From positions 184,137 through 248,136 of IMG/VR virus record IMGVR_UViG_3300040801_004532: 64,000 nucleotides of DNA; one strand, given 5' to 3'. Shown piece after piece: positions 2,778-46,832 of the stretch (within the stretch, counting starts at the first letter, position 1; every line of letters starts with the position of its first letter). A program made the position numbers and the translations under genes. The notes beneath the pieces are model-generated. The model saw nothing but the letters and a program-made list of their open reading frames with translations. It did not search any database and had not been told where the DNA came from.

Positions 2778-5351
2778 ATGAAAGATGTTCTGTTAGGTAC
2801 TTCGAATCTAGGAGAAAATCGAGCAGTTGAAGAGATAAGGATTAGCCCAAATTATGCAAATCTGATAATATCAACATTCGAAGGTACAAAGGAGGATGAT
2901 TCTACCCCAGCTATTAAACGAAAAACTATATTCACTAAAGATTATATTTCCAAATTAAATGAGTCAAATAAATTATTTACTGGAAATGTTATGCCTCCGA
3001 ATTGCAGATATATAGAACCAATCAACAGAGGGGTCATTGCAGTTATTGAAGAACCCCCTTCATTTAGGACAATTTTTGTTGATAGAGACCTCCGGGAGGA
3101 ATTTAATGTATTATCAAAACAAGGACGCTTGGATGAATATGAAATACCAAAGAATTTCTTAGAGAAAAACAGACAACCATACTACCTTAATTTAGCAATA
3201 CCTTATACCATCTTTCTTATGTGGATAACGGAATATTTCAGCGTTGGAATAACTGAAGTATATTTTCGTACAAATCAATTGATGGGTCTTTCAGACAACC
3301 TTCTTTTAGCTCCATTTTTAAATATACCAACTGAGCAACGAATTTGCTATCAATCTGGAAATAAATGTATATCCCTAACTGCAGCTATACAACAAGGGAT
3401 TAAGGCCTTTTGGGAATCAACATTTAACTCAGATTATACACACAATTATGAAAGTTATAAAGAAACCCCAGTCGTTGGAAATTATCTTGAATGGCAAGCT
3501 ATGTCTAAAATAAATCCATTGTTTATCTATAACGCAGACTGGCAAGTTAGGCCTTATAATTTAGGTCAAAGAATTAACAATTTAATTGAGCAGGCAGGAG
3601 GAAGGTCAAAAAATAAATTCGGTTATGCAGAACTTGCTGACTTATTTTATTCAAGACTAGATTCAGGCGTTGATATAAAACCTTCTCCAAGATCTAAAAA
3701 TAAATATAGATTGTTTTTTGATATAGCAAATAGTCTATATTTAGATGATATACTTCATATTGAAGTTGGCGATACATTTAAAACACATGATGGAAAGATA
3801 GCATATATTGACTCTCTTGCTGGATTTTCAGATGGGAGCGAAATTAAATATATCCAAATAGATATTAATGGAAAAAAACATCTGATGAAATATACAAAGG
3901 AATGTAAAAAATTCCTTTTTGATAAAGTAAAAGAAGACCGATTTGCCAAAGAATATACGTTATCAAATGGCCAGGTGATTAAGGAAGGTGATATACTTAT
4001 TATAAAACCAACTAAATCTATGGAAATTTTCAGACGAGTTGAATATATAAGAAAAAGCCGTGGCCTTGAAGAAGATGCAGAAATAAGAGTTGGTCGAAAT
4101 TATTACCTTGCATCAAGATTAAAAGCTGAAAAGTTAGATGCTGATGAACCCATATATAAAGGTGTAAAACTAATAAAAGATAAAGAGTATATTATCTCTA
4201 CTGGTGGAGGTGGTATATTTTCTGAGGGTTATAGATGTAAATTTGAAAAACTTGATGCTCACAGAGATTCGTTAGTAGCATCATTTATTCAAAGTGGGGG
4301 ACGAAGACGAACTCTAAACCTGTCGGTTCCAAGACAAACCCAACTAGCTTATCCACTTGATCAAACTAAGCCACTTAAGACAGGAATCTCAAAAATAGGG
4401 AGAAAAGTCTTCACAGTAACTAAAAATGGATCTCATCCAAGCAAAGAAGGAATGTGGCAAGTGGGTCCATCTCTAATATTTGACGGCAGTTATGCAGTAA
4501 ATGCTTTAACTGTTGGGGATTTTATTAAAGAACTATATGATGACGATAAATTTCATATATCCGGGGTAGATTTTGATATTGATTTTGCAATTGGTGAAAA
4601 GGTTGTCGTAGCCAATTGGGAAGACCCCCTTTCTGTTCTATCTGTAAAAACTATTCAGGGGTTTAAGGAAACAGATAATCATTTCGATTTTGTCCTTTCA
4701 GATAAAGCAGGCAATTTAACAACAGAGCAATTTATTGATCCCCAATCAAATATCTATTCTGGCAAAATTAGAAAGGTTACAAATAAATGGGGACGATTAT
4801 CAGTTGGTACAAAAATTATTGCTGATGTACCAGGAATCCCCAACTTTCCGAAGAAGGACGTAAATATTATTGTTGCTTTCATTATTGATATACCAGACGA
4901 ACCGTTAGTATTGTGTTCAAATGGTTGTACGTTATGGTATAACGATGTCGTAGAAAAATTTAAGAAGATAAAGATGGGATCAAAACAATGGGAAAAGCTA
5001 CAACATGTTCCCCTAGATTTATCAAAGATTAAATTTCAGGCAGGGGATGTGGTTAACGGATTCTCTGACTTTAGAGAGTCTGGTGGATACCTTTTATATG
5101 ACCCATCACCAACCAGATCACTGAAAGCAATGCCAATGAATGTTATGCATATTGGAGACGAAGGATATCATTATGTTGCTGATAAATATTTTATGAATGA
5201 TATGATTTTCGATTGTATTCCAGCTCCAAGAGTCGCAACAACTAAAGTTGCCGATTCTGATATAGTTAAGGGATATTTAAATATTAATAGTTACCAGATT
5301 GAAGAAGATGATAGTTCAATATTTTCATTTCTGAAACCAAAGGAGAATTAA
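2778..5351 (+). CDS. Prokaryotic E2 family D (PRTRC protein B-like) domain fused to about 600 aa of beta-rich, possibly SH3/KOW-like, repeats
   Basis: IEEPPSFRTIFV, LAIPYTIF, LLLAPFLNI..ICY and FWESTFNSD resemble Prok-E2_D. Lies directly upstream of JAB and ThiF genes. Confidence 0.65.
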   Translation: MKDVLLGTSNLGENRAVEEIRISPNYANLIISTFEGTKEDDSTPAIKRKTIFTKDYISKLNESNKLFTGNVMPPNCRYIEPINRGVIAVIEEPPSFRTIFVDRDLREEFNVLSKQGRLDEYEIPKNFLEKNRQPYYLNLAIPYTIFLMWITEYFSVGITEVYFRTNQLMGLSDNLLLAPFLNIPTEQRICYQSGNKCISLTAAIQQGIKAFWESTFNSDYTHNYESYKETPVVGNYLEWQAMSKINPLFIYNADWQVRPYNLGQRINNLIEQAGGRSKNKFGYAELADLFYSRLDSGVDIKPSPRSKNKYRLFFDIANSLYLDDILHIEVGDTFKTHDGKIAYIDSLAGFSDGSEIKYIQIDINGKKHLMKYTKECKKFLFDKVKEDRFAKEYTLSNGQVIKEGDILIIKPTKSMEIFRRVEYIRKSRGLEEDAEIRVGRNYYLASRLKAEKLDADEPIYKGVKLIKDKEYIISTGGGGIFSEGYRCKFEKLDAHRDSLVASFIQSGGRRRTLNLSVPRQTQLAYPLDQTKPLKTGISKIGRKVFTVTKNGSHPSKEGMWQVGPSLIFDGSYAVNALTVGDFIKELYDDDKFHISGVDFDIDFAIGEKVVVANWEDPLSVLSVKTIQGFKETDNHFDFVLSDKAGNLTTEQFIDPQSNIYSGKIRKVTNKWGRLSVGTKIIADVPGIPNFPKKDVNIIVAFIIDIPDEPLVLCSNGCTLWYNDVVEKFKKIKMGSKQWEKLQHVPLDLSKIKFQAGDVVNGFSDFRESGGYLLYDPSPTRSLKAMPMNVMHIGDEGYHYVADKYFMNDMIFDCIPAPRVATTKVADSDIVKGYLNINSYQIEEDDSSIFSFLKPKEN

Positions 5352-7057
5352 TGTTTACAGTATTCGTGAATGATGGCACACAGGAAATGCCAGACGATGA
5401 TATTATGTATATTGTTGGGAAAGAGGGTATATTCCTAAAGAAAAAAATGGGAATTATGGAAAGCATTGCTCCCGTTAAAAACATTTCTATTCTAGAGAGT
5501 GTCGGTTCAATGGCGAAAATGCATATTCCGCCCATTCCTGGTCCAACATTTGCAAAGGCGGTTTCCTTTTTCAGAGAAGTTTATAAAGAACATTTTGGAG
5601 AGTCGATTGTTCTTATATTCTTCAATGAAAAAAGTGGAAGATATAAATTATTTCCGCCACATCAAAAGGTTACATCTGCATCATTAGATTACAATAGAGG
5701 CATTACCATCGAAGGATGGACTATGGTTGGAACAATTCATAGTCATGGAGGTATGTCAGCATTCCATTCGGGTGTTGATGATGATGATGAAAAAACATTC
5801 GATGGATTGCATATTACAGTTGGAAATGTAAAAGATGAGGATGTAAGCATCTCTGCATCTATTGTATCCAACGGCTATCGCTTTATGATTGAACCAGAAG
5901 AATATATAAAGCAAGTCAAAAAGACAAAAGAAATTGATGAAGAAAGAACAAGCTATTCAACCAAAGTTTATAAATATGATCCAGTTCAAAAGAAAACTGT
6001 GCTTGATGTAGAGGCAAGCAAAAAAAGAGCCTATAGCTGGAGAAAATATGATAAACGATATAGAGTTATGGTTCCCGAAAGCAAAAGCAAACATCCAGAA
6101 ACATGGATGAACAATGTTGAAAAGGGGACTTATGCCTACAGACGTGGTGGATATTACGGCGGTTATTACGGCAATTATGGGGGATGGGGACATCATTACG
6201 ATAGAAGTGCATGGGGTCAAAGATTCCTGCCTGCCAAAACCCCTACCCAGACAACAAAACCAGGATCACCTCCGTTAAATGTTGGTCCATCGGCCAATGT
6301 AAAACCCGTTGAATTTCCAACTCATGATATACCAGTAGACCCAGATATGCCTTGCCTTACATGCAAGCATAGAGAGTGTAAAATTCTGGGTGAAGCAGAA
6401 GACGAATTTGATGAAGATTTTTATAAATGCGAGAACTGTGGTACCATATACCATGGTGAAATTGATATTTGCGATAAGTGCAATACAGATGATCATTTAA
6501 TTCTTATTGAGGCCAAAGATATGAAAGACCTATATGAGCCTCTTGTTCTTGATGAAATTGACAGAGATGCAGCTATAGCAGCACAACCAGATCAGCTTGG
6601 CTTTACATCATGCCCAGTTTGCAAAAGCGTATTTATGCGATTGGAAACTGATGACGAATGCCCATTTTGTAGTGCAGCGCTTGAAGGAGACAATGAATTA
6701 TTAACAAAACAAGTCGAATGCCCGTGGTGCTATCAAGGGGTATATGAAACAAAATTAGATCATCAACGACGGTGCCCATATTGCCGAAATGAAATCCCTT
6801 TGGATGCCAAACTTTTGACCATAGGATTTGATCCAGATGATGAAATTGAAAATCATATGAGATCTGATTCCGGGCCAGAAGATGAACAATCTGAAGATTT
6901 TCATGAAGAGGTCTTGCGTCAAGCTAAGCAAGCCGACGAATCAATCGAACGAATCCCCGATCCCAGTAAATCTGAAATTCCTATTTCATCCAGATTTACA
7001 GCTAAAAGGATCAAAGATATGATGCGTAAAGCATTTAGGGGGAAAGGTCATGCCTGA
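5351..7057 (+). CDS. JAB/MPN+ metalloprotease (Prok-JAB, PRTRC protein A-like) with Gly/Tyr-rich linker and multiple CxxC zinc ribbons
   Basis: JAMM motif GTIHSHGGMSAFHSGVD (HxH-x7-S-x2-D), DGLHITVG. C-terminal half has CENC/CDKC, CPVC/CPFC and CPWC/CPYC pairs. Confidence 0.85.
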   Translation: MFTVFVNDGTQEMPDDDIMYIVGKEGIFLKKKMGIMESIAPVKNISILESVGSMAKMHIPPIPGPTFAKAVSFFREVYKEHFGESIVLIFFNEKSGRYKLFPPHQKVTSASLDYNRGITIEGWTMVGTIHSHGGMSAFHSGVDDDDEKTFDGLHITVGNVKDEDVSISASIVSNGYRFMIEPEEYIKQVKKTKEIDEERTSYSTKVYKYDPVQKKTVLDVEASKKRAYSWRKYDKRYRVMVPESKSKHPETWMNNVEKGTYAYRRGGYYGGYYGNYGGWGHHYDRSAWGQRFLPAKTPTQTTKPGSPPLNVGPSANVKPVEFPTHDIPVDPDMPCLTCKHRECKILGEAEDEFDEDFYKCENCGTIYHGEIDICDKCNTDDHLILIEAKDMKDLYEPLVLDEIDRDAAIAAQPDQLGFTSCPVCKSVFMRLETDDECPFCSAALEGDNELLTKQVECPWCYQGVYETKLDHQRRCPYCRNEIPLDAKLLTIGFDPDDEIENHMRSDSGPEDEQSEDFHEEVLRQAKQADESIERIPDPSKSEIPISSRFTAKRIKDMMRKAFRGKGHA

Positions 7058-7736
7058 AAACCTAAATATTGTTATAATAGGGCTGGGAGGTATTGGTTCT
7101 GTTTTATCAGAAAGATTAAGTCGATTTCTAAATTATAATAGAGAATTGAAAACAAATATACTATTAGTTGATGGTGATTCATACGAGCCAAAAAATCAAG
7201 ATAGACAAGATTTCCTACAATTCGGAAACAAAGCCGAAATTAAGGCTGATGAATTAGCGATGAAATTTGGCGAGATTGAATTTGATGCCGTTGGTGAATA
7301 TATAAACGACGGCAATATTTCAGAAACAATACGGGATGGAGACATTATCTTCATTTGTGTTGACAATCACAAATCCAGAATGATAATTAACAATTACTGT
7401 AAAACTTTAACCAATGTTATTTTAATTTCTGGTGGGAATGAGCTTACAGATGGAAATGCACAACTTTATGTCAGAGAAGGAGGTGTGGATAAAACTCCCG
7501 ACTTGTGTACATACCATCCAGAGATAGCAAATCCCGACGATAAATTACCCGAAGAAATGTCTTGTGAAGAATTATCCCAGTCAGAGCCACAGTTGTATTT
7601 TACAAATCTAGGAGTGGCTACTCTTATGTGTTGGATGTTTTATAATGCGTTTGTCAATAAAGTATATGATAGATCCGAAGCTTATTTCGATATTCTTACA
7701 ATGTCTGCAGACTCCAAAATCCGAGTTACAAAGTGA
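7050..7736 (+). CDS. ThiF/E1-like adenylating enzyme (PRTRC ThiF-like)
   Basis: IIGLGGIG Rossmann loop, VDGDSYEPKNQDRQ, CVDNHKSR, SGGNE, candidate catalytic Cys in MSCEE, QLYFTN. Confidence 0.9.
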   Translation: MPENLNIVIIGLGGIGSVLSERLSRFLNYNRELKTNILLVDGDSYEPKNQDRQDFLQFGNKAEIKADELAMKFGEIEFDAVGEYINDGNISETIRDGDIIFICVDNHKSRMIINNYCKTLTNVILISGGNELTDGNAQLYVREGGVDKTPDLCTYHPEIANPDDKLPEEMSCEELSQSEPQLYFTNLGVATLMCWMFYNAFVNKVYDRSEAYFDILTMSADSKIRVTK

Positions 7737-7788
7737 ATTGTGAATCTCGGATCAACCAAACTTTTTCTTTCGAAGGGAGAAATGAACA

Positions 7789-8262
7789 ATGGGTGCAACT
7801 TTTACTCGTGATCAACTGGAAGTCAAGACCGCAGTCGAACTGAAACGTATGTGCGTGGACGAGCTGGGAATCCCCGGGATGACCAAAAAGCCGAAGGCCG
7901 TGGTCATCAACGCAATCATGGAAAAATTCGGGACCAGAACCGTGGCCTCCGGCGGCACCATCTCCAAAGATGGTGGCAAAATGACCGGAATGGAATGGCA
8001 GGCCCGAAGTGTCATGACCAAACCGGGTGCTCCTACCGGTGCCAAAACAACCACAACCATCCATGTTTCCTGCGGTGCCTCCGCCGGGAATTTCCCCGTA
8101 GCGGGCCGCAAGGTTTCCGAAGTCGGGGAATTCCTCCGGGAAGTTCTGAACGTGGATCGCCTATCGACCGGCCTGGTCAACGGCCATGAAGTCGACGCCG
8201 GCTATGTCCTGAAACCCGGCGACAATCTCGAGTTCCTCAAACCGGCAGGTAAAAAGGGATAA
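7789..8262 (+). CDS. Ubiquitin-like (beta-grasp) modifier with N-terminal Rho-N/HEH-like helical domain
   Basis: N-terminal LEVKTAVELKRMCVDELGIPGMTKKPKAVVINAI is Rho_N-like. C-terminal IHVSCG..VAGRKVSEV..LNV..LVNG..VLKPGDNLEFLKPAGKKG is beta-grasp-like with a terminal Gly. Confidence 0.8.
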   Translation: MGATFTRDQLEVKTAVELKRMCVDELGIPGMTKKPKAVVINAIMEKFGTRTVASGGTISKDGGKMTGMEWQARSVMTKPGAPTGAKTTTTIHVSCGASAGNFPVAGRKVSEVGEFLREVLNVDRLSTGLVNGHEVDAGYVLKPGDNLEFLKPAGKKG

Positions 8263-8289
8263 ACTGCCATATTAAGCAGTATGTTAGAA

Positions 8290-8309
8290 GGGGGGCCTCC
8301 GGGCCCCCC
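8290..8309 (+). terminator. GC-rich hairpin with UNCG tetraloop after the Ubl gene (attenuator or mRNA stabiliser)
   Basis: GGGGGGCC-TCCG-GGCCCCCC 8-bp stem with only a weak U tract. A second small stem ACTGC..GCAGT lies at 8263-8280. Confidence 0.55.
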
Positions 8310-8337: not shown

Positions 8338-9234
8338 GTGCTTCGTAAAGTGACAGTAATTGGACTTGGAACTCTTGGTGGGTTCCTTTGCAAGCACATA
8401 TCAGAACTAGAGAATATAAAAGAAATGGTTATCGTTGATAATGATATTGTGGAAAGCAAAAATGTTTTCTCATCTATTTACAAATATTCTCACATTGGCG
8501 AATATAAGGTCGACGCTCTAAAGGAAATAATTGAGGACGATGTTGCTGTCACAATCAGGAAACAAGATTATAGAGAAGGAAGTACAATTTTACCACTCAG
8601 CGATCTAGTAATTGATTGTCGTGATGTGGTTTGTGATAGAAAAGGCGAAATTGATGTAAGATTATTTATATCAGAAAGAATTCTTATTTTCGATTGTAGA
8701 AAATTTGTCAGAAATACTTGTAGTTATGATGGTAGTTATTCTTTAAAATTGAACAAAAGCGAAATAAACAAAGCAGCCTTTTTCGCTGCTCAAATAATAA
8801 ATAGCGAAGAACTCCCCGATATGATAAAAAATAATATGGTTCAAAGAATTGATTTAAATCTATTGCCATCTGTAATGAGCAGAGCAATAAGAAGAACCCT
8901 TGAAAATAAGATAGATATAATTTATGATCTAACAGAGAATGCAAGAAGGTTACATTGCATTGATGAAAATATCCGACCAATCTTAACATTAAATAAACAA
9001 AAAGATACAAAAGTTTTTGTTGGTACAAGGGATGATACCAGAAAATTTCCAGAGGTAATAACGAGCAAGTATCAAATAATACCACAAAATTCATTAAAAG
9101 ATTCTTTCGATGTAATTCAAAAGTTAACTGAAGTTGTTCAAAGACAACCAGGCGTAAGAAATTTCATAGTTACAGTAAGGAGCGAAAATGGGGAAGATTT
9201 TGTCGAGTTACTGGAAGAAACAGGAGCCGCGTGA
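8338..9234 (+). CDS. Second ThiF/E1-like Rossmann protein, truncated fold plus unknown C-terminal domain
   Basis: VIGLGTLGG, VDNDIVESKN, YKVDAL, DLVIDCRD. Likely start is GTG 8338 after SD GAGAGG, because the track start at 8281 runs through the hairpin. Confidence 0.7.
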   Translation: MLRKVTVIGLGTLGGFLCKHISELENIKEMVIVDNDIVESKNVFSSIYKYSHIGEYKVDALKEIIEDDVAVTIRKQDYREGSTILPLSDLVIDCRDVVCDRKGEIDVRLFISERILIFDCRKFVRNTCSYDGSYSLKLNKSEINKAAFFAAQIINSEELPDMIKNNMVQRIDLNLLPSVMSRAIRRTLENKIDIIYDLTENARRLHCIDENIRPILTLNKQKDTKVFVGTRDDTRKFPEVITSKYQIIPQNSLKDSFDVIQKLTEVVQRQPGVRNFIVTVRSENGEDFVELLEETGAA

Positions 9235-9661
9235 ATTTATCGAAGATCGAATAACAATATGGGGGTATAACCCACACCTACCAGTAGTTGAAGAAGCCCA
9301 TGTATACGAAGGCATAATTGTTCCTGATAGGATGATAAAAGACAAAAATGTTTATCAGATTGTACAATTAGACGAGCTTTATTATATAAACGGTTTCGTA
9401 GTAATAACAGAAAATGAGTTAGTTAAAAATGTAATTTTATTTGGTTATCATCCAAATCGAGATCCAGAAACACATCTATATTGTTTACCCGACAGAAAAA
9501 AGAATATTAAATTTACACAAGAATATTTTAGTTTGTTGATGACTAACATCAAGACATATTATCTTGATGATTGCTTTTATATGCCCGGCAAACATCAGGT
9601 CAAATATAAAAAATTAAAGTCGTTGTATGTTCAAATGAACGAAGGAGAAAAACATGGATGA
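9188..9661 (+). CDS. Putative E2/UBC-like conjugating protein
   Basis: FGYHPNRDPETHLYCLP matches the E2 active-site pattern HPN-x(7-8)-hydrophobic-C-L. Lies at the end of the E1/JAB/Ubl operon. Start uncertain. Confidence 0.55.
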   Translation: MGKILSSYWKKQEPREFIEDRITIWGYNPHLPVVEEAHVYEGIIVPDRMIKDKNVYQIVQLDELYYINGFVVITENELVKNVILFGYHPNRDPETHLYCLPDRKKNIKFTQEYFSLLMTNIKTYYLDDCFYMPGKHQVKYKKLKSLYVQMNEGEKHG

Positions 9662-9878
9662 AGAAAAGAATAATATAATGGAAGACTATATAAGGTCCTT
9701 GATTAAAGATGAGTTAAAAAACATAGATGTAATATTAAAAAAGGAAGAAGCCAATGAAATAGTAAAGGCAATTATGCCACAATTAGATAGCTTAATAGCA
9801 GATCGTATAAAGCTGCATTTTTCAGAGCTGGCGAAAATGGTCCAGCAAAAATTTGGTGGAAGTGACAAAGGAGAGTAG
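9654..9878 (+). CDS. Small helical hypothetical protein immediately upstream of beta'
   Basis: SD GAAGGAG, overlaps upstream stop, ends 3 nt before rpoC. Confidence 0.6.
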   Translation: MDEEKNNIMEDYIRSLIKDELKNIDVILKKEEANEIVKAIMPQLDSLIADRIKLHFSELAKMVQQKFGGSDKGE

Positions 9879-9881
9879 ATA

Positions 9882-12548
9882 ATGCCAAAGTTATTGGATT
9901 ATTCTGCATTTTGTGAAAACCTAGAGGAAGTTTCCTCTCTAAAAGTGTTTGGAAAGAAAAAGTTTCATCCACATGGTCTGTTCTCCGAGCAAATTTTCGG
10001 CCCGATAAAAAATTATACTTGCCAATGTGGCATCTATTATGGAATTTCTAAATCGGGCGGTAAATGCGACCTTTGTGGGGTCGATATTGTTAATAGTGAT
10101 GAACGAAGAAAAAGATTTGCAAAAATCAAAATACCAATACCAGTTGTCAATCCAATCTTTTATGATTTGCTTGCAGAGATTGGAGGAAAAACATTAAAGC
10201 ATGCAATTGATGAATTGATGCGTAATGACAAAAGCTTCCTTTATATGGATGGCGGTGAGCATATTATCAGCACAGATGAACCCCCAGATGGAGTACGAAT
10301 ATACGAAAGAACAGATGCAATAATGAAGCTAGTGAGTGATCTAGCAAATCTGTTTGCAAACGATGGGGTAGAAGAATGGAAATTAATTACAAACAATATA
10401 GATAGCCTTTTGATAAACCAAATAATCGTTTTACCTCCGGATCTCAGACCAACATCTGCTTCTGGTGGCGGTAAACATTTGATGGATAAAATCAATAGGT
10501 ATTATGTTCAGATATTAACAAAGAAAGAAATTATGAAAGATACAATGCTTGATATTATACGAGACAAGAAATTATATTATACCTACTTCAAGCAATTGCA
10601 GAAAGATGTAAATGAATTATACCATCGTATATTAGAAAAGATGGCTAAAAAAGAAGGGTTGATCAGAGGAAACATTTTGGGGAAACGAATTGATTTCTCC
10701 GGTAGAGCAGTCATTACTCCTGATCCAACCCTCAACCTTGATGAGTGTGTTTTACCATATACAATGGTTCTGGAGATATTTAAACTTCCGATTGCAAAAC
10801 GAATCATTCAGCTTGGTAAATTTAAACTATTGAATAAAGCTATTGATTTTGTTGATAGATGTATTGAAACAAATTCTCCAGTATTATGCAAAATCTGTGA
10901 AGAGATAACCAAAGATGAGGTATGTATTCTAAACCGTCAACCATCTCTTCATAAACTTGGAATGCTTGGATTTAATATTAAACTAACATTGGATAAGGTT
11001 ATAAAAATACATCCGCTTGTTTGTCCTCCATTCAATGCAGATTTCGATGGAGATCAAATGGCAGTTTATATCCCAATTACAGAAGAAGCAAAACAAGAAG
11101 TTCGTGAAAAAATGTTTGTTACAAAAAATCTAAGTAGTCCGGCAAATGAGGGGTTGACAACAACACCGAGTCAAGATGTAATCCTTGGTATTTATTTTAT
11201 CACATCAGAAGATTATCCAGATCGAGAAGAAGGTTTTAAAATTTTCAATGACTGTCTGCCTTCTGATTATCCAGAAATAAAAGAAATCATAAATAAAAAT
11301 AAATTGATGGTTATTTTAAATGATATTAAAGATAGATATCCAGAAAACACAACAATGAAAGTACTAGATTCAATTAAAAGAGTTGGTTTCAAATATGCAA
11401 CTCTTTTAGGTTCAACAATGTCACTTGATGATTTTGATATTGCTGGCGTCGAAAAAGTGAAGAGTGATATATTTGGAAAAGATGATGTAAGAGAGCAATT
11501 AACCGCTTTTTCTAATCCAGAAGTAACCAGTTTTCTAAAAGATAATTTTCCATATGCTTACATGATCGAATCTGGAGCAAGAGGAAGCTGGGATCAAGCC
11601 AAACAGCTAATATTGGCAAGAGGGTTCATCTCAAATTTTGAAGGCGAAATTCTTCCTGTACCGATTAAACATAGTTTGGTTGAAGGGTTAACTCAAGAGG
11701 AATTCTTTTATTCAACATATGGATGTAGAAAAGGTCTTCTTGATGTTGCGTTGAATACAGGTACAAGCGGATACTTATCTAGAAAATTAATTTTTACATG
11801 TGCGAACCTTCAACTAGATGAAGGACTTGATGATTGCGGAACAACTGACCTATTAGAAGTCGATGTTAAAAACGAAAGAAAAGCAAGAATGTTAGTTAAT
11901 CGCTATTATCTAAATGGCGGAAAACTAGTAAAAATTACACCAGATAACTATAAAGATATAGTTGGAAAAACAATTGAAATAAGAAGTCCGATTTTATGTA
12001 ACTCGCCAAAACTTTGCAAGATTTGTTACGGCGATCTTCATAAAAAATTAAACAGTAGGTTTGTTGGAATCATTGCAGCTCAAACATTGGGCGAGCGAGG
12101 AACTCAGCTTGTATTAAGAACCTTTCATACATCTGGTTCAGCGATTATCAAAGGGGTCGATGATTATAAAGATCAATCAATGAGACAAAGTGATATTATT
12201 GGAGATCTTGCATCGGTCGCAAGGATGCTACATAAATTTACAGGCAAGACATACGTTCAAATAGTAGACGAATTATTTGAGGTTTACAATAAAGATATTT
12301 ACCATGTCCATTTTGAATGTGTAGTTGCACAGCTAATGTGGCACAATAATAAAAAGTGGAGATTATTGAAAAATAGAGATACGGTAAAACCAACGTATTA
12401 TAGTATTCAATCAGTGCCAAATCAAGAGAGTTGGATATTGGCAATGGCATTTTCAAACCCCAAGCGTAGCATTTTACGGGGTATTGTATATGAAGGTAAA
12501 TATTCAGGGATAATGGACAAAATTCTCAAAGGAGAAAAAATTGAATGA
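9882..12548 (+). CDS. rpoC: DNA-directed RNA polymerase beta' subunit (phage-encoded, compact, unsplit)
   Basis: HGLFSEQIFGP, Zn site CQCG..CDLCG, LGKRIDFSGRAVI, LNRQPSLH, catalytic FNADFDGD, SGARG, SGYLSRKL, TQLVLRTFH. Confidence 0.97.
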   Translation: MPKLLDYSAFCENLEEVSSLKVFGKKKFHPHGLFSEQIFGPIKNYTCQCGIYYGISKSGGKCDLCGVDIVNSDERRKRFAKIKIPIPVVNPIFYDLLAEIGGKTLKHAIDELMRNDKSFLYMDGGEHIISTDEPPDGVRIYERTDAIMKLVSDLANLFANDGVEEWKLITNNIDSLLINQIIVLPPDLRPTSASGGGKHLMDKINRYYVQILTKKEIMKDTMLDIIRDKKLYYTYFKQLQKDVNELYHRILEKMAKKEGLIRGNILGKRIDFSGRAVITPDPTLNLDECVLPYTMVLEIFKLPIAKRIIQLGKFKLLNKAIDFVDRCIETNSPVLCKICEEITKDEVCILNRQPSLHKLGMLGFNIKLTLDKVIKIHPLVCPPFNADFDGDQMAVYIPITEEAKQEVREKMFVTKNLSSPANEGLTTTPSQDVILGIYFITSEDYPDREEGFKIFNDCLPSDYPEIKEIINKNKLMVILNDIKDRYPENTTMKVLDSIKRVGFKYATLLGSTMSLDDFDIAGVEKVKSDIFGKDDVREQLTAFSNPEVTSFLKDNFPYAYMIESGARGSWDQAKQLILARGFISNFEGEILPVPIKHSLVEGLTQEEFFYSTYGCRKGLLDVALNTGTSGYLSRKLIFTCANLQLDEGLDDCGTTDLLEVDVKNERKARMLVNRYYLNGGKLVKITPDNYKDIVGKTIEIRSPILCNSPKLCKICYGDLHKKLNSRFVGIIAAQTLGERGTQLVLRTFHTSGSAIIKGVDDYKDQSMRQSDIIGDLASVARMLHKFTGKTYVQIVDELFEVYNKDIYHVHFECVVAQLMWHNNKKWRLLKNRDTVKPTYYSIQSVPNQESWILAMAFSNPKRSILRGIVYEGKYSGIMDKILKGEKIE

Positions 12549-15544
12549 AAATAGTCAATCCTACCTACAAAATTCAGGATGAAGACAATAGCATCTTCAC
12601 TCTGAGAAAACGGGACTACGAAAATATTTTACCCTTAGCGAGACAAATTCTTGAACCAGTAAGAGAAATTGGTTTCGAAATTACAGAACTTGAACTAAGA
12701 GATTCAAGATTTTCTTCCGGTGAACTTTCAAGAACGATAAAGCAAACTCTTGTTATTCGCCTTCAAAAAGGAACCTCAAATATTGATCTTTCAATATTCG
12801 TTCCAAAATTAGTTGACGACAATTATATATTTATCAATGGAAGGAAAAAGATTCCGTTATTTCAATTATTTGATATTCCTGTTGTAACAAGGGGCGAGTC
12901 GATAAAATTAAGAACTAATGTAGCAACATTGATGGTGGTTGTAGAAAAAGAGGAACCAAAAATTAATATAAGTTTTCTCGGAAAGAAAGTGCCTCTATCA
13001 TTATTGATGTTAGCATATTATGGCCCAGAAGTACTAAACAAACGATTTAATTTATCACAGTTCAATATAAAAGATACAAGTAATTTAATGGAGTTGTTAA
13101 TCGAAGATATAAAACTATTTTGGATTGAGTCAAAGGGTTATACCCAAGATGATTTTATAGTTGAATTAGGACGCGATTATTCAAGATATAATGCAAAATC
13201 AAAGGGCGAAGATGTTGTATATGCCCTAGATTTGATTCCAAAAATTGATCCAATCACAGCTCAATTTTTACAAACCGGATCAATTATCGAAGAGTTATTA
13301 TTGGCATTACAAACAGGCGATATAGATGATACGTTATTTACAAATAAGAGAATTAGATGTTTTGAATATATGATCTTTTCTAAACTATCTAAAATTGTTT
13401 TCGATCTTTGTTTTTCAAACAGGACAAGCAGACAACCAAAATTCAACATTAACTCAAATCAAATTATTTCAGAATGTAATGTTTCAGATATTGTTCAGTT
13501 TGATTTTTCAATCAACCCAATTGAAGAATTAACTAAAATGTCAAGAGTTAGTCTTTTGGGTCCAGGCGGATTTAAAAGAGAAAACATTCCAAGGCATTTA
13601 CGAGATATTTGCCCGTCGATGTTTGGACGGATTTGTCCGGTTGATACACCAGATCGTGATAATTGTGGTGTATTGCAAAATTTTGTTTCAAATGTGAAAC
13701 TTGAGGAAAACATGAGGTTCTCAGAGGAAATCTCTGAACAACCAATATCAATTCCTGTTTCGATGGTTCCGTTCTTGAAGAATGATGATCCAACCAGATT
13801 ACAAATGGCATCATCACAAATGAGACAGGCGATTCTTTTAAAAGATTTTGATGAACCCATGATAAAATCTGGATGTGAGGGACTATATACAGACAAAACC
13901 CAATTTGTCAAAAAGGCGAAGAAAAATGGGGAAGTGATCCACGTTGACAACAAGTATTTAATTGTAATCTATGATGATGGTGAAGCAGAAATCTTTGACA
14001 TAATGTATCGAAAAATTTATGTTGAGCACATGGATTTTATGAATATCTATGTCAAAGCGGGTGACAAGTTCAAGGCTGGGGATATACTTGCTGAAAGTAA
14101 TTTTTGTAAAGATGGAAATATATGCTTTGGAAAAAATCTCTTGACAGGAGTTATGGTTTACTACGGTAATAATTATGAAGATGGAATTGTTGTTTCAGAT
14201 AGACTTGTTAATGAAGATGTTTTAACATCAGTACATTTTAAAGATCTATCATTTACACTACCACCAAATAAGGTCTTGTTATCATTACAAGAAGGAAGAT
14301 ACAAGCCGTTGCCGAAAGCTCTGGAACAATTAAGCGCAGGGTCTCCTTATGCAAAGATAAAAACTCTTTCTACCGATGATATGTATTCTGTATTTTCAGA
14401 AGAAATTTCATTGGAAGCTGAAAAATCATTTATTATTCCTGAGGTAAATATCTATGCAAATACATGGAATGATGAAATTCCTGAGTTCAATGACTGGATT
14501 GAAAAGACAGTCAGTGAACAACAAGAGCGAGATGCAGGATTAAGAAAAATTATAAAGGACAAACTTCCATCCGAAATATCTAAGAAATTCATTAAGGAAA
14601 GCGGATTGGAACTGTCTTCATTTGTTGGAAAGTATAAAATGAAGCGAGAAAAAATAAACGGCATCCATATTGAAATGTATGGTATTCACTTTAGAAAAAT
14701 AAAAGTGGGTGATAAAATAGCGAACAGGCATGGAAATAAAGGAGTTATTTCCAGAATTGTTCCTCATGAAAAGATGCCAAAATTAGAAGATGGAAGACAT
14801 CTTGATATCTGCATCAATCCATTGGGTATTATCTCAAGAATGAACATCGGACAGTTGTTCGAATTGCAATTATCAATGTCTTTATATGATTTACAACAGA
14901 CATTGCTAAAAATGATTAACGAAGAAAAACCCCAAGACGAGATTAAAAAATATCTTATGGGGTATATAAATACTGTGGATAAAACAAAAACCGGATGGTA
15001 TTCAGAGCAATTTGAGAATCAATTACCAAAAGAAATCACAAACGAATTTGTTGCAACCTTAGTTTTAATTCAACCACCTTTTGAGTCATGTAAATTAGAT
15101 GATATTAAAAAGGCTCTTGAATATACCGGTACCGAATTTAAACAAAAGGTTTATGATCCGTTATCAAAAACCTATTTTAAAAATCCCATTGCTGCAGGTT
15201 ACATTTATTTCCTAAGGATGGTTCATATTGCAGAAGAAAAATTAGCAGCGAGAGGCATTGGAGCATATGCAAAAAGAACCCTTCAACCATTAGGGGGAAG
15301 GAAAAATAAAGGTGGCCAAAGATGCGGCGAAATGGAAACAGCTTGTATTATTGGTCATGATGCACCAATAAATCTATTTGAATTTCTTACTACAAAATCT
15401 GACTGTATAGATTTGAAAAATTTGTACATCAGGAAGTTTATTGATCCAAATTTAGTTGACGAAAGTAAAGAGGTTGATTCCATTCCGGAATCTGTAAAAT
15501 TGTTAAATGCGTACTTAACAGTTATTGGAGTAAAACAAAAATGA
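12545..15544 (+). CDS. rpoB: DNA-directed RNA polymerase beta subunit (phage-encoded, unsplit)
   Basis: GRICPVDTPDRDNCG, MASSQMRQA, NYEDG, GDKIANRHGNKGVIS, INPLGIISRMNIGQ, GGQRCGEME. ATGA overlap with rpoC. Confidence 0.97.
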   Translation: MKIVNPTYKIQDEDNSIFTLRKRDYENILPLARQILEPVREIGFEITELELRDSRFSSGELSRTIKQTLVIRLQKGTSNIDLSIFVPKLVDDNYIFINGRKKIPLFQLFDIPVVTRGESIKLRTNVATLMVVVEKEEPKINISFLGKKVPLSLLMLAYYGPEVLNKRFNLSQFNIKDTSNLMELLIEDIKLFWIESKGYTQDDFIVELGRDYSRYNAKSKGEDVVYALDLIPKIDPITAQFLQTGSIIEELLLALQTGDIDDTLFTNKRIRCFEYMIFSKLSKIVFDLCFSNRTSRQPKFNINSNQIISECNVSDIVQFDFSINPIEELTKMSRVSLLGPGGFKRENIPRHLRDICPSMFGRICPVDTPDRDNCGVLQNFVSNVKLEENMRFSEEISEQPISIPVSMVPFLKNDDPTRLQMASSQMRQAILLKDFDEPMIKSGCEGLYTDKTQFVKKAKKNGEVIHVDNKYLIVIYDDGEAEIFDIMYRKIYVEHMDFMNIYVKAGDKFKAGDILAESNFCKDGNICFGKNLLTGVMVYYGNNYEDGIVVSDRLVNEDVLTSVHFKDLSFTLPPNKVLLSLQEGRYKPLPKALEQLSAGSPYAKIKTLSTDDMYSVFSEEISLEAEKSFIIPEVNIYANTWNDEIPEFNDWIEKTVSEQQERDAGLRKIIKDKLPSEISKKFIKESGLELSSFVGKYKMKREKINGIHIEMYGIHFRKIKVGDKIANRHGNKGVISRIVPHEKMPKLEDGRHLDICINPLGIISRMNIGQLFELQLSMSLYDLQQTLLKMINEEKPQDEIKKYLMGYINTVDKTKTGWYSEQFENQLPKEITNEFVATLVLIQPPFESCKLDDIKKALEYTGTEFKQKVYDPLSKTYFKNPIAAGYIYFLRMVHIAEEKLAARGIGAYAKRTLQPLGGRKNKGGQRCGEMETACIIGHDAPINLFEFLTTKSDCIDLKNLYIRKFIDPNLVDESKEVDSIPESVKLLNAYLTVIGVKQK

Positions 15545-45959: not shown

Positions 45960-45978
45960 TTATTTAAAGGAGGTCTTT

Positions 45979-46239
45979 ATGAAGACAAAATTCATTTGTC
46001 CTCAATGTAGGGATGAGGGACGCCCAACTGTCAACTTGATAGTCACAGGGGCAAATCCAAGACCGGAATGTCCTGTTTGCGGCTTCAAATGTCGTAGGTA
46101 TGGAAATACGATGATTGATCAATCGGAAGATCGTCGGGGGGCATTCAACAGCGTTGGAAACTGGGATGCCCGTTTCACGAAATACGATCGAGGCGGAAAG
46201 GATCGAATCTGGCACTCAAGTTGGGGCGCCGAAAATTAA
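45979..46239 (+). CDS. Small zinc-ribbon protein
   Basis: SD AAGGAGG, CPQC..CPVCG. Confidence 0.6.
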   Translation: MKTKFICPQCRDEGRPTVNLIVTGANPRPECPVCGFKCRRYGNTMIDQSEDRRGAFNSVGNWDARFTKYDRGGKDRIWHSSWGAEN

Positions 46240-46253
46240 AGGAGATTAAATAA

Positions 46254-46598
46254 ATGACAACCCTAGAAGAGATGATTCCAGACTATCCCGTTCATAGAAT
46301 AACCCCCAAATGTTGTCGTTGTGGAGGCGAATTGACGTTGGAAGATAATCTTGGAAACGGCGTAATGTTATATACATGCCCTTTGTGTGATTATCCTCCT
46401 CCCGAGGATGATCACAATCTCTTCTGTGTCTCAAGTCAATTGGAAACTCGGGTGTATAAAAATCATTGTTGGAATTGTGGTGCAGCAATTGATTCTACCT
46501 TTGCAACCCCTTCGAGAACGCCCGGTATGGGCTACTACTGCCCTCGCTGTGGTGAAGATCTTACAAAGTGGAAACTAATGAAAGGAGGTGTTGTTTAA
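46254..46598 (+). CDS. Double zinc-ribbon protein
   Basis: SD AAGGAG, CCRCG..CPLC and CWNCG..CPRCG. Confidence 0.65.
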   Translation: MTTLEEMIPDYPVHRITPKCCRCGGELTLEDNLGNGVMLYTCPLCDYPPPEDDHNLFCVSSQLETRVYKNHCWNCGAAIDSTFATPSRTPGMGYYCPRCGEDLTKWKLMKGGVV

Positions 46599-46723
46599 TG
46601 CCAAAAAAAGACGGAAGCGGTCCAAAAGGGCAAGGTCCAAAAGATGGACGTGGCGGCGGAACTGGCCGTAACACGGGAAAAGGAAGTGGTTCAAAAAGCG
46701 GGGGTCAGAAAGGCAACTGCTAA
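46598..46723 (+). CDS. 41-aa Gly/Lys-rich peptide, DUF5320-like (missing from the track)
   Basis: Translated by hand as MPKKDGSGPKGQGPKDGRGGGTGRNTGKGSGSKSGGQKGNC. SD AAAGGAGG and TAATG overlap. Confidence 0.65.
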   Translation: MPKKDGSGPKGQGPKDGRGGGTGRNTGKGSGSKSGGQKGNC

Positions 46724-46728
46724 TCAGT

Positions 46729-46824
46729 TTGGAGATGGGGAGGTCCGACTGTTGGATACGGGAGCGATCGAATCCTGTTACCGCGCAGTTGGAGATTCGA
46801 TCACTCCCCATCTCCAATTTTTTT
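46729..46824 (+). terminator. Large multi-stem terminator/structured RNA between convergent genes
   Basis: 14-bp basal stem TTGGAGATGGGGAG/CTCCCCATCTCCAA, internal stems, T7 tail. Confidence 0.6.
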
Positions 46825-46832
46825 GCTTTAAA

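What the first reader, a model, noticed from the sequence alone, without database searches (positions are those of the whole stretch)
7789..8309. Single-gene GC spike and UNCG hairpin at the Ubl gene
Seen: three 60-nt samples of the Ubl ORF count 57%, 57% and 63% GC with many C/G-ending codons, while both flanking genes look AT-rich (roughly one-third GC by eye). The switch is sharp at the ORF borders and the gene is followed by an 8-bp GC stem with a UCCG loop. Inference: either the Ubl is codon-adapted to a GC-richer host for very high expression, with the hairpin giving a stoichiometric excess over the enzymes, or the modifier alone was recently exchanged from a host or plasmid cassette.
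Basis: partly seen in the sequence, partly recalled or inferred. Interest (0 to 1): 0.62.

Follow-up and report, generated by a model that had tools for sequence, protein, structure and literature searches.

The report
Codon-tuned phage ubiquitin-like gene with hairpin
A small ubiquitin-like gene in an AT-rich giant phage is written in unusually GC-rich (C-ending) codons and is followed by a very stable RNA hairpin; both features recur across about 60 related phages, so they look like inherited tuning for high output rather than a recently imported gene.

Summary
ORF 7789-8262 has GC 0.56 and GC3 0.63, against flanking genes at 0.33-0.35 and a genome-wide ORF mean GC3 of 0.27 (z about 3.9). 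An 8-bp G/C stem with a C(UCCG)G loop lies at 8290-8309.

It is not a one-off or an import. In 59 related viral loci the gene holds the same place (E2-like, JAB, E1a, Ubl, E1b, RNA polymerase). Its GC exceeds its flanks in every locus. It has the top GC3 within +-10 kb in 35 of 49 loci. A strong hairpin follows it in 46 of 49 distinct loci, against 0-27% after each neighbouring gene.

Ubl distances track RpoC and E1a distances (rho 0.83). No copy was found in 185,579 cellular genomes.

The bias is codon-specific, not a symmetric GC pressure. C-ending codons rise, four-fold A-ending codons fall in 48 of 48 loci, and Lys/Glu/Gln codons barely change.

The phage's 29 tRNAs are mostly U34, which read the A-ending codons. 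The capsid gene prefers C only in two-fold boxes. About a dozen other genes share the Ubl's codon dialect and are enriched for hairpins.

Best reading: selection for high Ubl output from an operon, by host-tRNA-type codons plus a 3' stabilising hairpin that lacks a U-tract. Expression itself could not be tested because no RNA data exist.

The parts
7789..8262 (+). Ubl gene, 157 aa. It has an N-terminal Rho_N-like helix-extension-helix domain (about residues 5-50), a disordered linker (about 50-88) and a C-terminal beta-grasp domain ending ...LKPAGKKG. GC is 0.56 and GC3 is 0.63.
7773..7779 (+). Shine-Dalgarno sequence AAGGGAG, 9 nt before the ATG. Relatives carry AAGGAG in the same place, in an E1a-Ubl gap of median 33 nt.
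7789..7815 (+). The first nine codons, still A/T-ending. This AT3-rich translation-initiation region precedes the GC3 switch.
8263..8280 (+). Small 5-bp stem-loop (ACTGC...GCAGT) directly after the stop codon. It is present in the closest relatives.
8290..8309 (+). 8-bp G/C stem with a C(UCCG)G tetraloop and no U-tract (AAUCUUAAAAAAG follows). It is conserved in position, and its stem covaries across the family.
7050..7736 (+). E1a, a ThiF-family protein of 228 aa. It is AT-rich (GC 0.35) and lies upstream in the same operon.
8338..9234 (+). E1b, a second ThiF-family protein of 298 aa from a GTG start. It is AT-rich (GC 0.33) and begins 28 nt after the hairpin, behind its own SD.
5351..7057 (+). 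JAB/MPN-domain protein of 568 aa with several CxxC pairs. It is the presumed peptidase of the cassette.
2778..5351 (+). 857-aa protein with a weak Prok-E2_D match (22.8 bits, just under the cut-off of 25).

Best explanation
The Ubl gene is an old, vertically inherited core gene of a clade of AT-rich jumbo phages. Its synonymous sites are under gene-specific selection for C-ending codons. Its segment of the operon transcript ends in a very stable stem-loop that lacks a U-tract.

Shown here:
- The composition spike is conserved across the family and is caused mainly by codon choice.
- The hairpin is conserved and acts on the sense RNA.
- The gene sits in a fixed operon with only a ribosome-binding site in front of it.

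Inferred:
- The C-ending codons in four-fold boxes are read by G34 tRNAs. The phage does not encode these (its own four-fold tRNAs are U34), so the Ubl is written for the host tRNA pool.
- Efficient translation, together with a 3' hairpin that blocks 3'-to-5' exonucleases, would raise the amount of modifier above that of the co-transcribed E1, E2 and JAB enzymes. A substrate consumed stoichiometrically would need such an excess.

About a dozen other genes in the genome share this dialect-plus-hairpin layout, so the Ubl is the local member of a small expression class.
For: Spike and codon signature:
- GC3 is 0.63 against an expected 0.25.
- C3 is 0.41 against 0.10 in bulk genes.
- Across 48 distinct loci, four-fold NNA is depleted in 48 of 48, four-fold NNC is raised in 45 of 48 and two-fold NNC in 47 of 48. 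The G-ending fraction of Lys/Glu/Gln codons changes by only +0.07, and four-fold NNT is unchanged.

Family-wide behaviour:
- Ubl GC exceeds flank GC in 59 of 59 loci.
- The Ubl has the top GC3 within +-10 kb in 35 of 49 loci and ranks first or second in 44 of 49.
- High-GC3 states are scattered over the tree, and sister pairs differ mostly by T>C changes.

tRNAs and the two dialects:
- The phage carries 29 tRNAs; among the four-fold boxes it has G34 only for Gly (plus an ACG tRNA for the Arg CGN box) and otherwise U34.
- The capsid and tube genes prefer C only in two-fold boxes (93rd-96th percentile) and are low in four-fold C (4th-31st percentile). The Ubl is at the 99th percentile for four-fold C and lowest in the genome for four-fold A. 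The relative G1 repeats this pattern.

Operon context:
- The E1a-Ubl gap is a median 33 nt holding a consensus SD.
- The first 20 codons are AT3-rich.

Hairpin:
- 46 of 49 distinct loci have a hairpin of -12 kcal/mol or stronger, against 0-27% after each of ten neighbouring genes.
- All nine stem pairs covary.
- The 5' arm is G-rich in 44 of 48 loci, G.U pairs occur in 39 of 48, and the sense fold is the more stable one in 41 loci against 5.
- A U-tract follows in only 9 of 49 loci, and the terminator scan does not call the hairpin.

Expression class:
- GC3-rich genes are enriched for downstream hairpins in G0 (6 of 15 against 18 of 260, p = 7e-4) and in G1 (6 of 13 against 12 of 208, p = 1.5e-4).
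- The same gene families are GC3-rich in G0 and G1.
Against: - There is no expression measurement. Only DNA runs from a freshwater sediment metagenome hold the sequence.
- The host, its GC content and its tRNA pool are unknown, so 'host-adapted' is inferred from what the phage tRNA set lacks.
- The capsid gene, surely abundant, is far less biased. That requires the extra assumption that its abundance is set by transcription or by phage tRNAs.
- The amplitude varies widely between relatives (GC3 0.13 to 0.81) and the cause is unknown.
- A few relatives show almost no excess (L021, L040, L054).
- The hairpin covariation alignment was chosen from predicted hairpins, so its paired fraction is circular.
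Confidence: 0.55

Rival explanations
1. Temporal or regime class. The GC3-rich genes, the Ubl among them, are translated before the phage's own tRNAs accumulate, or otherwise independently of them. Their codon dialect would then mark timing (an early, host-tRNA regime) rather than sheer abundance. This partly overlaps the best explanation.
For: - There are two dialects: structural genes avoid four-fold NNC while the Ubl class prefers it.
- In the window, + strand non-structural genes have four-fold C 0.14 against 0.08 for - strand structural genes (p = 2e-6, Ubl excluded).
- The tRNA array is conserved in G0 and G1.
- Published work reports early/late codon differences and phage tRNAs matching late genes (PMC5683454, PMC12482277; titles and abstracts seen).
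Against: - The Ubl is embedded in an operon whose upstream and downstream genes are written in bulk codons. The gap before it is a median 33 nt with no room for a promoter, so its timing should equal theirs.
- E1a and JAB show only a weak shift in the same direction (four-fold C at the 85th-86th percentile).
Confidence: 0.25
2. Selection acts on the mRNA rather than on decoding. A higher G+C content would give a more structured, longer-lived message, or remove A/U-rich nuclease sites, with the hairpin serving the same end.
For: - The co-occurrence of GC-rich bodies with strong 3' hairpins fits an mRNA-stability theme.
- The linker region is as GC3-rich as the conserved domain, so selection for accuracy at conserved residues is not the driver.
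Against: - The bias is asymmetric. C rises far more than G, four-fold T is unchanged while A drops, and Lys/Glu/Gln stay A-ending.
- A plain G+C or anti-A/U pressure should move all of these.
Confidence: 0.12
3. Recent horizontal replacement of the modifier alone, from a GC-richer host, plasmid or phage.
For: - The gene is a sharp compositional island whose codon usage matches other GC-rich ORFs of the same genome.
- It has a moron-like layout with a hairpin at its end.
Against: - Synteny is identical in 59 loci.
- Ubl distances co-vary with RpoC and E1a (rho 0.83), and the nearest kin are the same by either gene.
- The closest relative is 82% identical in DNA continuously across both junctions and has the same spike.
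- GC-rich alleles share only 53-57% of synonymous codons.
- None of the 59 loci has GC-rich flanks; the highest flank GC is 0.39.
- No relative was found in 185,579 GTDB species genomes.
- Other GC3-rich genes are also conserved phage genes that are GC3-rich in relatives.
Confidence: 0.03
4. A neutral, local mutational process, for example GC-biased gene conversion in a recombination hot spot created by the gene's high conservation.
For: - The gene is conserved well enough (65% identity between G0 and G1, against a 53% mean) to recombine between co-infecting relatives.
- GC3 is evolutionarily labile.
Against: - The codon-specific asymmetry argues against it.
- RpoC and the capsid gene are more conserved (71-88% identity between G0 and G1) but not GC3-rich.
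- The spike stops at the ORF border, and the first codons are spared.
Confidence: 0.05
5. The hairpin is a true transcription terminator or attenuator for the phage's own two-subunit-type RNA polymerase. It would need no U-tract, and would lower read-through into E1b and the polymerase genes rather than stabilise RNA.
For: - The hairpin is sense-strand specific and positionally fixed right after the stop codon, whatever gene follows it.
- The phage encodes beta'- and beta-like subunits just downstream.
Against: - The capsid gene of the same genome ends in a canonical hairpin plus a T7 tract, so U-tract terminators are in use here.
- E1b and the RNA polymerase genes follow without a recognisable promoter.
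- The termination signals of this polymerase are unknown, so this reading cannot be excluded.
Confidence: 0.2

Closest known systems
C(UUCG)G / UNCG tetraloop hairpins in phage T4 intercistronic regions (Tuerk et al. 1988; recalled from my own knowledge)
   Same: It is an extra-stable tetraloop hairpin with a C-G closing pair, lying between cistrons of a large lytic phage and acting on the sense RNA. The window has C(UCCG)G. Among relatives, UUCG occurs in 10 and UCCG in 4 of 49 loci.
   Different: Only about a third of the family uses UNCG loops. What is conserved is a long G-run/C-run stem, not the loop. The function has not been measured here.
Intercistronic stabiliser hairpins that set subunit stoichiometry within operons, such as Rhodobacter puf and E. 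coli malEFG REP (recalled from my own knowledge)
   Same: A hairpin without a U-tract follows the cistron whose product is needed in excess, inside a polycistronic unit. The expected effect is segmental mRNA stability.
   Different: Here the hairpin is combined with a recoded gene body. Neither decay rates nor processing sites are known.
Codon-usage split between phage gene classes, with phage tRNAs matching late genes (PMC5683454, PMC12482277)
   Same: One genome holds two codon dialects. The phage's tRNA array matches the A-ending four-fold codons of the bulk and structural genes.
   Different: The host-type dialect is confined to about a dozen genes. The most extreme one lies in the middle of an operon of bulk-dialect genes. 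The amplitude reaches GC3 0.81 in a 26% GC background (L053).
Morons: compositionally odd, self-contained transcription units in phage genomes (recalled from my own knowledge)
   Same: A composition island with a hairpin at its 3' end.
   Different: It is not sporadic. It has a fixed position in all 59 loci, belongs functionally to the flanking E1/E2/JAB genes, and has no space for a promoter of its own.
Bacterial Ubl-E1-E2-JAB conjugation operons (Bil and related systems; PMC10557695, PMC1779556)
   Same: A beta-grasp protein ending in Gly lies next to ThiF-type E1, E2-like and JAB genes.
   Different: The cassette is encoded by a phage as a core module next to its RNA polymerase genes. It has two separate E1-like proteins. 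The Ubl carries an N-terminal Rho_N-like domain. The E2 match is below the cut-off. No PADLOC search was run, so membership of a defence family was not tested.

Membership tests
Ubiquitin-like beta-grasp modifier (ThiS/MoaD/Ub type) | beta-grasp (beta-beta-alpha-beta-beta) fold | tested here: met
   In the AF2 model, residues 87-157 run E90-95, E98-103, H109-120, E128-130, E147-149 with pLDDT 64-75. All structural matches to this part are TGS, MoaD, ISG15 or ubiquitin at Z 4.5-5.5, which is modest. Pfam gives no hit for our protein. One homologue has a precomputed TGS hit.
Ubiquitin-like beta-grasp modifier (ThiS/MoaD/Ub type) | Exposed C-terminal glycine available for adenylation | tested here: met
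   The invariant tail is LKPAGKKG. It is terminal in the window and is followed by one Cys in 17 of the 27 aligned homologues.
Ubiquitin-like beta-grasp modifier (ThiS/MoaD/Ub type) | Dedicated E1 (ThiF) partner, with E2 and JAB in the same operon | tested here: met
   ThiF matches score 62.9 and 36.9 bits on either side. Prok-JAB scores 25.5 bits. Prok-E2_D scores only 22.8 bits against a cut-off of 25. The gene order is conserved in 59 loci.
Ubiquitin-like beta-grasp modifier (ThiS/MoaD/Ub type) | Covalent conjugation to targets, or a sulfur-carrier thiocarboxylate | not testable with these tools
   This needs biochemistry.
Rho-independent (intrinsic) terminator | G/C-rich hairpin | tested here: met
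   8-bp stem of all G-C pairs at 8290-8309.
Rho-independent (intrinsic) terminator | U-tract directly 3' of the stem | tested here: not met
   AATCTTAAAAAAG follows the stem. The terminator scan does not call it. Only 9 of 49 relatives have at least 5 T in the next 10 nt. The capsid gene does have one.
cUNCGg tetraloop hairpin | UNCG loop closed by a C-G pair | tested here: met
   The window has C(UCCG)G. Across the family 35 of 49 loops are tetraloops, of which 14 are UUCG or UCCG and 3 are GAAA, so the loop type is not a family constant.
Moron or recently acquired island | Sporadic distribution among related phages and incongruent phylogeny | tested here: not met
   The gene is present and syntenic in all 59 loci. 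Its distances are congruent with RpoC and E1a.
Translationally selected (highly expressed) gene | Codon bias towards codons that match abundant tRNAs, beyond what composition explains | tested here: inconclusive
   The direction and asymmetry fit, but the host tRNA pool and the expression level are unknown.

The most novel reading that the evidence does not exclude
This clade of jumbo phages runs two translation regimes in one genome. The bulk and structural genes form a 'phage-tRNA dialect'. A small, conserved set of genes, each capped by a U-tract-less hairpin, forms a 'host-tRNA dialect'. The most extreme member of that set is a ubiquitin-like modifier carrying a nucleic-acid-binding Rho_N-like domain. 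It would be made in stoichiometric excess as the substrate of a phage-encoded E1/E2/JAB conjugation machine placed next to the phage RNA polymerase genes. If so, the composition spike would be a readable genomic marker of which phage proteins must be made independently of the phage's own tRNAs.
Probability: 0.3. Interest if true: 0.75.

Novelty: new member of a known kind. Interest (0 to 1): 0.5.

Why it matters
The spike is a stable, selected property and not a sign of gene import. That changes how such islands should be read in phage genomes, where GC islands are routinely annotated as recent acquisitions.

The contrast between four-fold NNC codons (Ubl class) and NNA/NNT codons (capsid, tube and bulk genes), set against a U34-only phage tRNA array, gives a concrete and testable handle on what phage tRNA arrays are for.

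The result also flags the Ubl as probably the most heavily produced component of an undescribed phage-encoded ubiquitin-like system. That is a useful starting point for anyone who wants to find the system's targets.

Tried and rejected
Searches that returned nothing useful:
- Pfam and PHROGs on the Ubl gave no hit.
- A profile search of PDB sequences gave only a weak FHA-domain match (Dun1, E = 0.022) over the ...NG.EV..DY.LK.GD... motif. I rejected it because the fold model and every structural match are beta-grasp.
- Megablast of 7 kb against 50,697 phage records found no match.
- The genome-contig scan found no relative.
- Rfam on the window found nothing.
- The Atlas search on a 381-aa GC-rich protein gave no usable hit.
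- A search for the GC-rich secreted 374-aa protein in five large relatives gave no match. Its metagenomic homologues turned out to sit in AT-rich phage contigs and to be GC3-elevated as well, which removed my provisional idea that these islands are host-derived.

Ideas tested and dropped:
- Sigma-70-like promoter matches are not above chance: 63 against 56 +- 8.
- An overlapping or antisense gene, or an embedded RNA element. No column shows synonymous constraint, and alternative-frame open stretches simply follow GC3.
- An assembly chimera. This is rejected by conservation in 59 loci and by the 82%-identical relative L090.

No alternative genetic code was used.
Full report
WHAT IS THERE

The window is bases 184137-248136 of a 248,136-bp IMG/VR virus record. 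The record is 35.2% GC, is about 79% complete, and was recovered from a freshwater sediment metagenome.

It is a T4-like jumbo myovirus:
- a Gp23-type capsid gene;
- a tail sheath, tube and baseplate;
- beta'- and beta-like RNA polymerase genes;
- 29 tRNAs plus a tmRNA.

The flagged ORF, 7789-8262 (+), encodes 157 aa. It lies in a co-directional run of genes:

| Coordinates | Product |
|---|---|
| 2778-5351 | 857-aa protein, weak Prok-E2_D match |
| 5351-7057 | JAB protein |
| 7050-7736 | ThiF protein 'E1a' |
| 7789-8262 | Ubl |
| 8338-9234 | ThiF protein 'E1b' |
| 9188-9878 | two small ORFs (9188-9661, 9654-9878) |
| 9882-12548 | RpoC-like |
| 12545-15544 | RpoB-like |

OBSERVATION

The composition spike is real.
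- The Ubl has GC 0.561 and GC3 0.633. E1a and E1b have GC 0.346 and 0.335, and GC3 0.27 and 0.25.
- Across 334 ORFs of the genome, mean GC3 is 0.273 (sd 0.093), which puts the Ubl at z = 3.9.
- Amino-acid composition contributes part of the excess (GC1 0.59, GC2 0.46). Given its amino acids and bulk codon usage, however, the expected GC3 is only 0.25.
- The 3' edge is sharp. At the 5' edge the first nine codons are still A/T-ending.

The hairpin is as described: GGGGGGCC-UCCG-GGCCCCCC at 8290-8309, 27 nt after the stop codon. AAUCUUAAAAAAG follows it, so there is no U-tract. It is one of only ten perfect G/C-rich hairpins in the 248 kb.

One correction is needed. The spike is the only one in its neighbourhood but not in the genome. 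About a dozen real ORFs elsewhere have GC3 of 0.5-0.68 with nearly the same codon usage.

IS IT A Ubl?

About 400 metagenomic homologues share 60-80% identity. The tail LKPAGKKG is invariant; it is terminal in the window, and one extra Cys follows it in 17 of the 27 aligned homologues.

An AlphaFold model built from 27 sequences (mean pLDDT 58) has three parts:
- an N-terminal helical domain that matches the Rho N-terminal domain (1a62; Z 6.2, rmsd 1.6 A over 45 residues);
- a disordered linker;
- a C-terminal beta-beta-alpha-beta-beta domain whose matches are all TGS, MoaD, ISG15 or ubiquitin, at Z around 5.

The scores are modest. Together with the terminal Gly and the flanking E1 genes, the Ubl label is reasonable.

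COMPARATIVE TEST

A scan of viral contigs returned 59 related loci.

Synteny and co-divergence:
- The gene order up354, up126, E2-like, JAB, E1a, Ubl, (sometimes one inserted ORF), E1b, o157, o74, RpoC, RpoB holds wherever the contig reaches.
- Pairwise Ubl distances track RpoC (Spearman 0.83) and E1a (0.83) as closely as those two track each other (0.82).
- The window's nearest kin are the same by Ubl and by RpoC (L002, L003, L004, L009, L013).
- The closest relative found (L090) is 82% identical in DNA over 2.2 kb, continuously across both junctions. It has the same spike (GC3 0.62 against 0.20-0.32) and an identical hairpin.
- No relative was found in one genome from each of 185,579 prokaryotic species.

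Recent exchange of the modifier is therefore not supported.

The spike is a family trait:
- Ubl GC exceeds flank GC in all 59 loci (mean +0.14, range +0.05 to +0.37).
- Its GC3 is the highest of all ORFs within +-10 kb in 35 of 49 loci, and first or second in 44.
- The amplitude varies widely, from GC3 0.13 to 0.81. L053 reaches 0.81 in 26% GC flanks.
- High values are scattered over the Ubl tree next to low-GC3 sisters.
- GC-rich alleles are not copies of one another. The window and L002 share only 57% of codons at identical residues.
- Sister pairs differ mainly by T>C changes.
- No alignment column shows suppressed synonymous variation. Alternative-frame open stretches simply follow GC3, so there is no hidden overlapping gene or RNA element.

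NATURE OF THE BIAS

The bias is codon-specific and not a symmetric G+C pressure. The table compares the Ubl with its own neighbouring genes in 48 distinct loci.

| Codon class | Ubl | Neighbours | Loci where Ubl > neighbours |
|---|---|---|---|
| C fraction, two-fold pyrimidine boxes | 0.41 | 0.20 | 47/48 |
| Four-fold NNC | 0.22 | 0.09 | 45/48 |
| ATC among Ile codons | 0.41 | 0.14 | 43/48 |
| Four-fold NNA | 0.28 | 0.45 | 0/48 |
| Four-fold NNT | 0.36 | 0.37 | 23/48 (unchanged) |
| G-ending Lys/Glu/Gln | 0.28 | 0.21 | 37/48 |

The phage's tRNAs have U34 anticodons for Pro, Thr, Ala, Val, Ser(UCN), Leu(CUN) and Gly. They also have U34 for Arg(AGR), Leu(UUR), Gln, Glu and Lys. Among four-fold boxes G34 occurs only for Gly, and Arg(CGN) is read by an ACG tRNA; the two-fold pyrimidine boxes Asp, Asn, Phe, His, Cys and Ser(AGY), and Ile, also have G34. 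The 223-kb relative G1 carries the same array.

The abundant structural genes speak a different dialect:
- The capsid gene has two-fold C 0.46 (96th percentile) but four-fold C 0.08 (31st) and four-fold A 0.46.
- The tube gene has two-fold C 0.40 (93rd percentile), four-fold C 0.05 (4th) and four-fold A 0.51.
- The Ubl has four-fold C 0.50 (99th percentile) and four-fold A 0.13, the lowest in the genome.

G1 repeats this. Its Ubl is lowest in four-fold A and at the 99th percentile for four-fold C, while its capsid gene shows C preference only in two-fold boxes.

Within the window, non-structural + strand genes have more four-fold C than structural - strand genes (0.14 against 0.08, p = 2e-6 with the Ubl excluded).

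My inference is that the Ubl is written for G34 four-fold tRNAs that only the host can supply. Structural and bulk genes lean on the phage's own tRNAs. That Lys and Glu stay A-ending would fit a host in which those amino acids are read mainly by U34 tRNAs, as in E. coli. This last point rests on general knowledge and was not tested here.

A CLASS, NOT A SINGLETON

- The six G0 genes of highest GC3 that have G1 orthologues are the Ubl, a nicotinamidase-like protein, a vWA protein, a 381-aa protein, a DnaJ-type zinc-finger protein and a secreted 306-aa protein. All six are among the nine highest in G1.
- GC3 of orthologues correlates overall (rho 0.42 over 156 pairs).
- A GC-rich secreted protein that looked host-derived has homologues in other AT-rich phage contigs, and these are again GC3-elevated.
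- GC3-rich genes are enriched for strong downstream hairpins: 6 of 15 against 18 of 260 in G0 (p = 7e-4), and 6 of 13 against 12 of 208 in G1 (p = 1.5e-4).

THE HAIRPIN

- In 46 of 49 distinct loci, a hairpin of -12 kcal/mol or stronger (median -22) lies within 70 nt of the Ubl stop. The rate after each of ten neighbouring genes is 0-27%.
- It stays with the Ubl even where another ORF is inserted before E1b.
- Loops are tetraloops in 35 of 49 loci: UUCG in 10, UCCG in 4 and GAAA in 3.
- On 28 loop-anchored sequences, all nine stem pairs show double-sided changes. This set was chosen as predicted hairpins, so the 97% pairing is partly circular.
- The 5' arm is G-rich in 44 of 48 loci. G.U pairs occur in 39 of 48. 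The sense strand folds better than the antisense in 41 loci against 5 (p = 1e-7). The structure therefore acts in the Ubl transcript.
- A U-tract follows in only 9 of 49 loci, and the intrinsic-terminator scan does not call the hairpin.
- The capsid gene of the same genome ends in a textbook hairpin plus T7 terminator.

The E1a-Ubl gap is a median 33 nt (often 2-35) and holds only an AAGGAG-type SD. The Ubl is therefore co-transcribed with E1a.

MECHANISM

Shown by the analyses above:
- The Ubl is a vertically inherited operon gene.
- Its codon choice is selected in a gene-specific way.
- Its 3' end carries a conserved, sense-specific hairpin without a U-tract.

Inferred:
- A strong SD, an AT3-rich start, host-tRNA-type codons and a 3' stem-loop that blocks exonucleases together raise Ubl output above that of the co-transcribed E1, E2 and JAB enzymes.
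- This suits a modifier that is consumed stoichiometrically.
- The capsid gene can reach abundance through its own transcription unit and terminator, which would explain why it does not need this dialect.

Rivals:
- A timing class (host-tRNA regime before phage tRNAs accumulate). This partly overlaps the main explanation but is weakened by the operon context.
- Selection on mRNA G+C as such, weakened by the asymmetry of the bias.
- Biased gene conversion, weakened by the same asymmetry and by the more conserved but unbiased RpoC and capsid genes.
- Recent transfer, rejected.
- A terminator specific to the phage polymerase, which remains open.

KNOWN RELATIVES AND NOVELTY

The parts are familiar: stable UNCG hairpins between T4 cistrons, intercistronic stabilisers that set operon stoichiometry, and early/late codon dialects with phage tRNAs serving late genes (PMC5683454, PMC12482277).

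Three things appear to be undescribed. Three full-text searches found no report of them:
- this phage-encoded Ubl/E1/E2/JAB cassette;
- the size and conservation of the spike;
- the clean four-fold NNC versus NNA contrast measured against a U34-only tRNA array.

I rate it a new member of known kinds of regulation, of moderate interest.

LIMITS

- There are no RNA data.
- The host is unknown.
- The gene calls used for genome-wide statistics are simple longest-ORF calls. A few 'GC-rich ORFs' overlap tRNA or tmRNA genes and were ignored.
- The fold model has medium confidence.

Noticed in passing
outside the window: G000 66784-66860; also present in relative G1: A tRNA with anticodon CUA (an amber suppressor, which ARAGORN calls 'Pyl') sits in the conserved tRNA array. 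TAG still ends 13% of the called genes of 100 aa or more in G0 (36 of 275) and 8% in G1 (17 of 221), so any TAG recoding would be partial or restricted to late genes.
   Followed up: partly
outside the window: G000 68211-68561; also present in G1: A phage-encoded tmRNA with tag ADDYYTEVALAA (ADDYYTDFAKAA in G1) lies in the middle of the tRNA array.
   Followed up: no
window 7050-7736 and 8338-9234: Two separate ThiF-type proteins (228 and 298 aa) flank the Ubl in all 59 loci. E1a is much more conserved (50-71% identity) than E1b (25-63%). A heterodimeric E1 with one catalytic and one scaffold subunit is a possibility.
   Followed up: no
window 7789-7940 (Ubl residues 1-50): The modifier carries an N-terminal Rho_N-like helix-extension-helix domain (Z 6.2 to PDB 1a62). 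A Ubl fused to a likely nucleic-acid-binding module is unusual.
   Followed up: partly
Ubl C-terminus, alignment A1: 17 of the 27 aligned homologues end ...KKGC and 10, including the window's, end ...KKG. The single extra Cys suggests C-terminal processing, perhaps by the JAB protein, in part of the family.
   Followed up: no
window 45960-46830: A second, weaker GC-rich patch (GC 0.47-0.51) holds small + strand genes. One is a Gly/Lys-rich 41-aa peptide (MPKKDGSGPKGQGPK...) followed by a long hairpin plus a T-run. Others are small Cys-rich, zinc-ribbon-like ORFs. The greedy ORF caller had assigned spurious - strand ORFs here.
   Followed up: partly
outside the window: G000 148211-151301: A cluster of three or four GC-rich genes (GC 0.50-0.57) encodes proteins with clear signal peptides. 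Homologues in other AT-rich phage contigs are also GC3-elevated.
   Followed up: partly
L081 (G002) 27-587: In a 28% GC relative, a ribosomal-protein-S1-like ORF with S1 domain repeats lies at the contig end, with GC 0.60 and GC3 0.83. This matches the extreme Ubl of that phage (GC3 0.81). It could be another 'host-dialect' phage gene or host DNA joined on at assembly.
   Followed up: no
loci L006-L008, L010, L011, L015, L017, L019, L024-L026, L031, L035, L045: In these relatives an extra ORF of about 600 bp is inserted between the Ubl hairpin and E1b. The hairpin stays with the Ubl.
   Followed up: no
window 6001-6450: There is a local GC rise (0.43-0.44) inside the JAB gene. It coincides with a Gly/Tyr-rich low-complexity stretch (RRGGYYGGYYGNYGGWGHHY), so it is driven by amino-acid composition and not by codon choice.
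   Followed up: no
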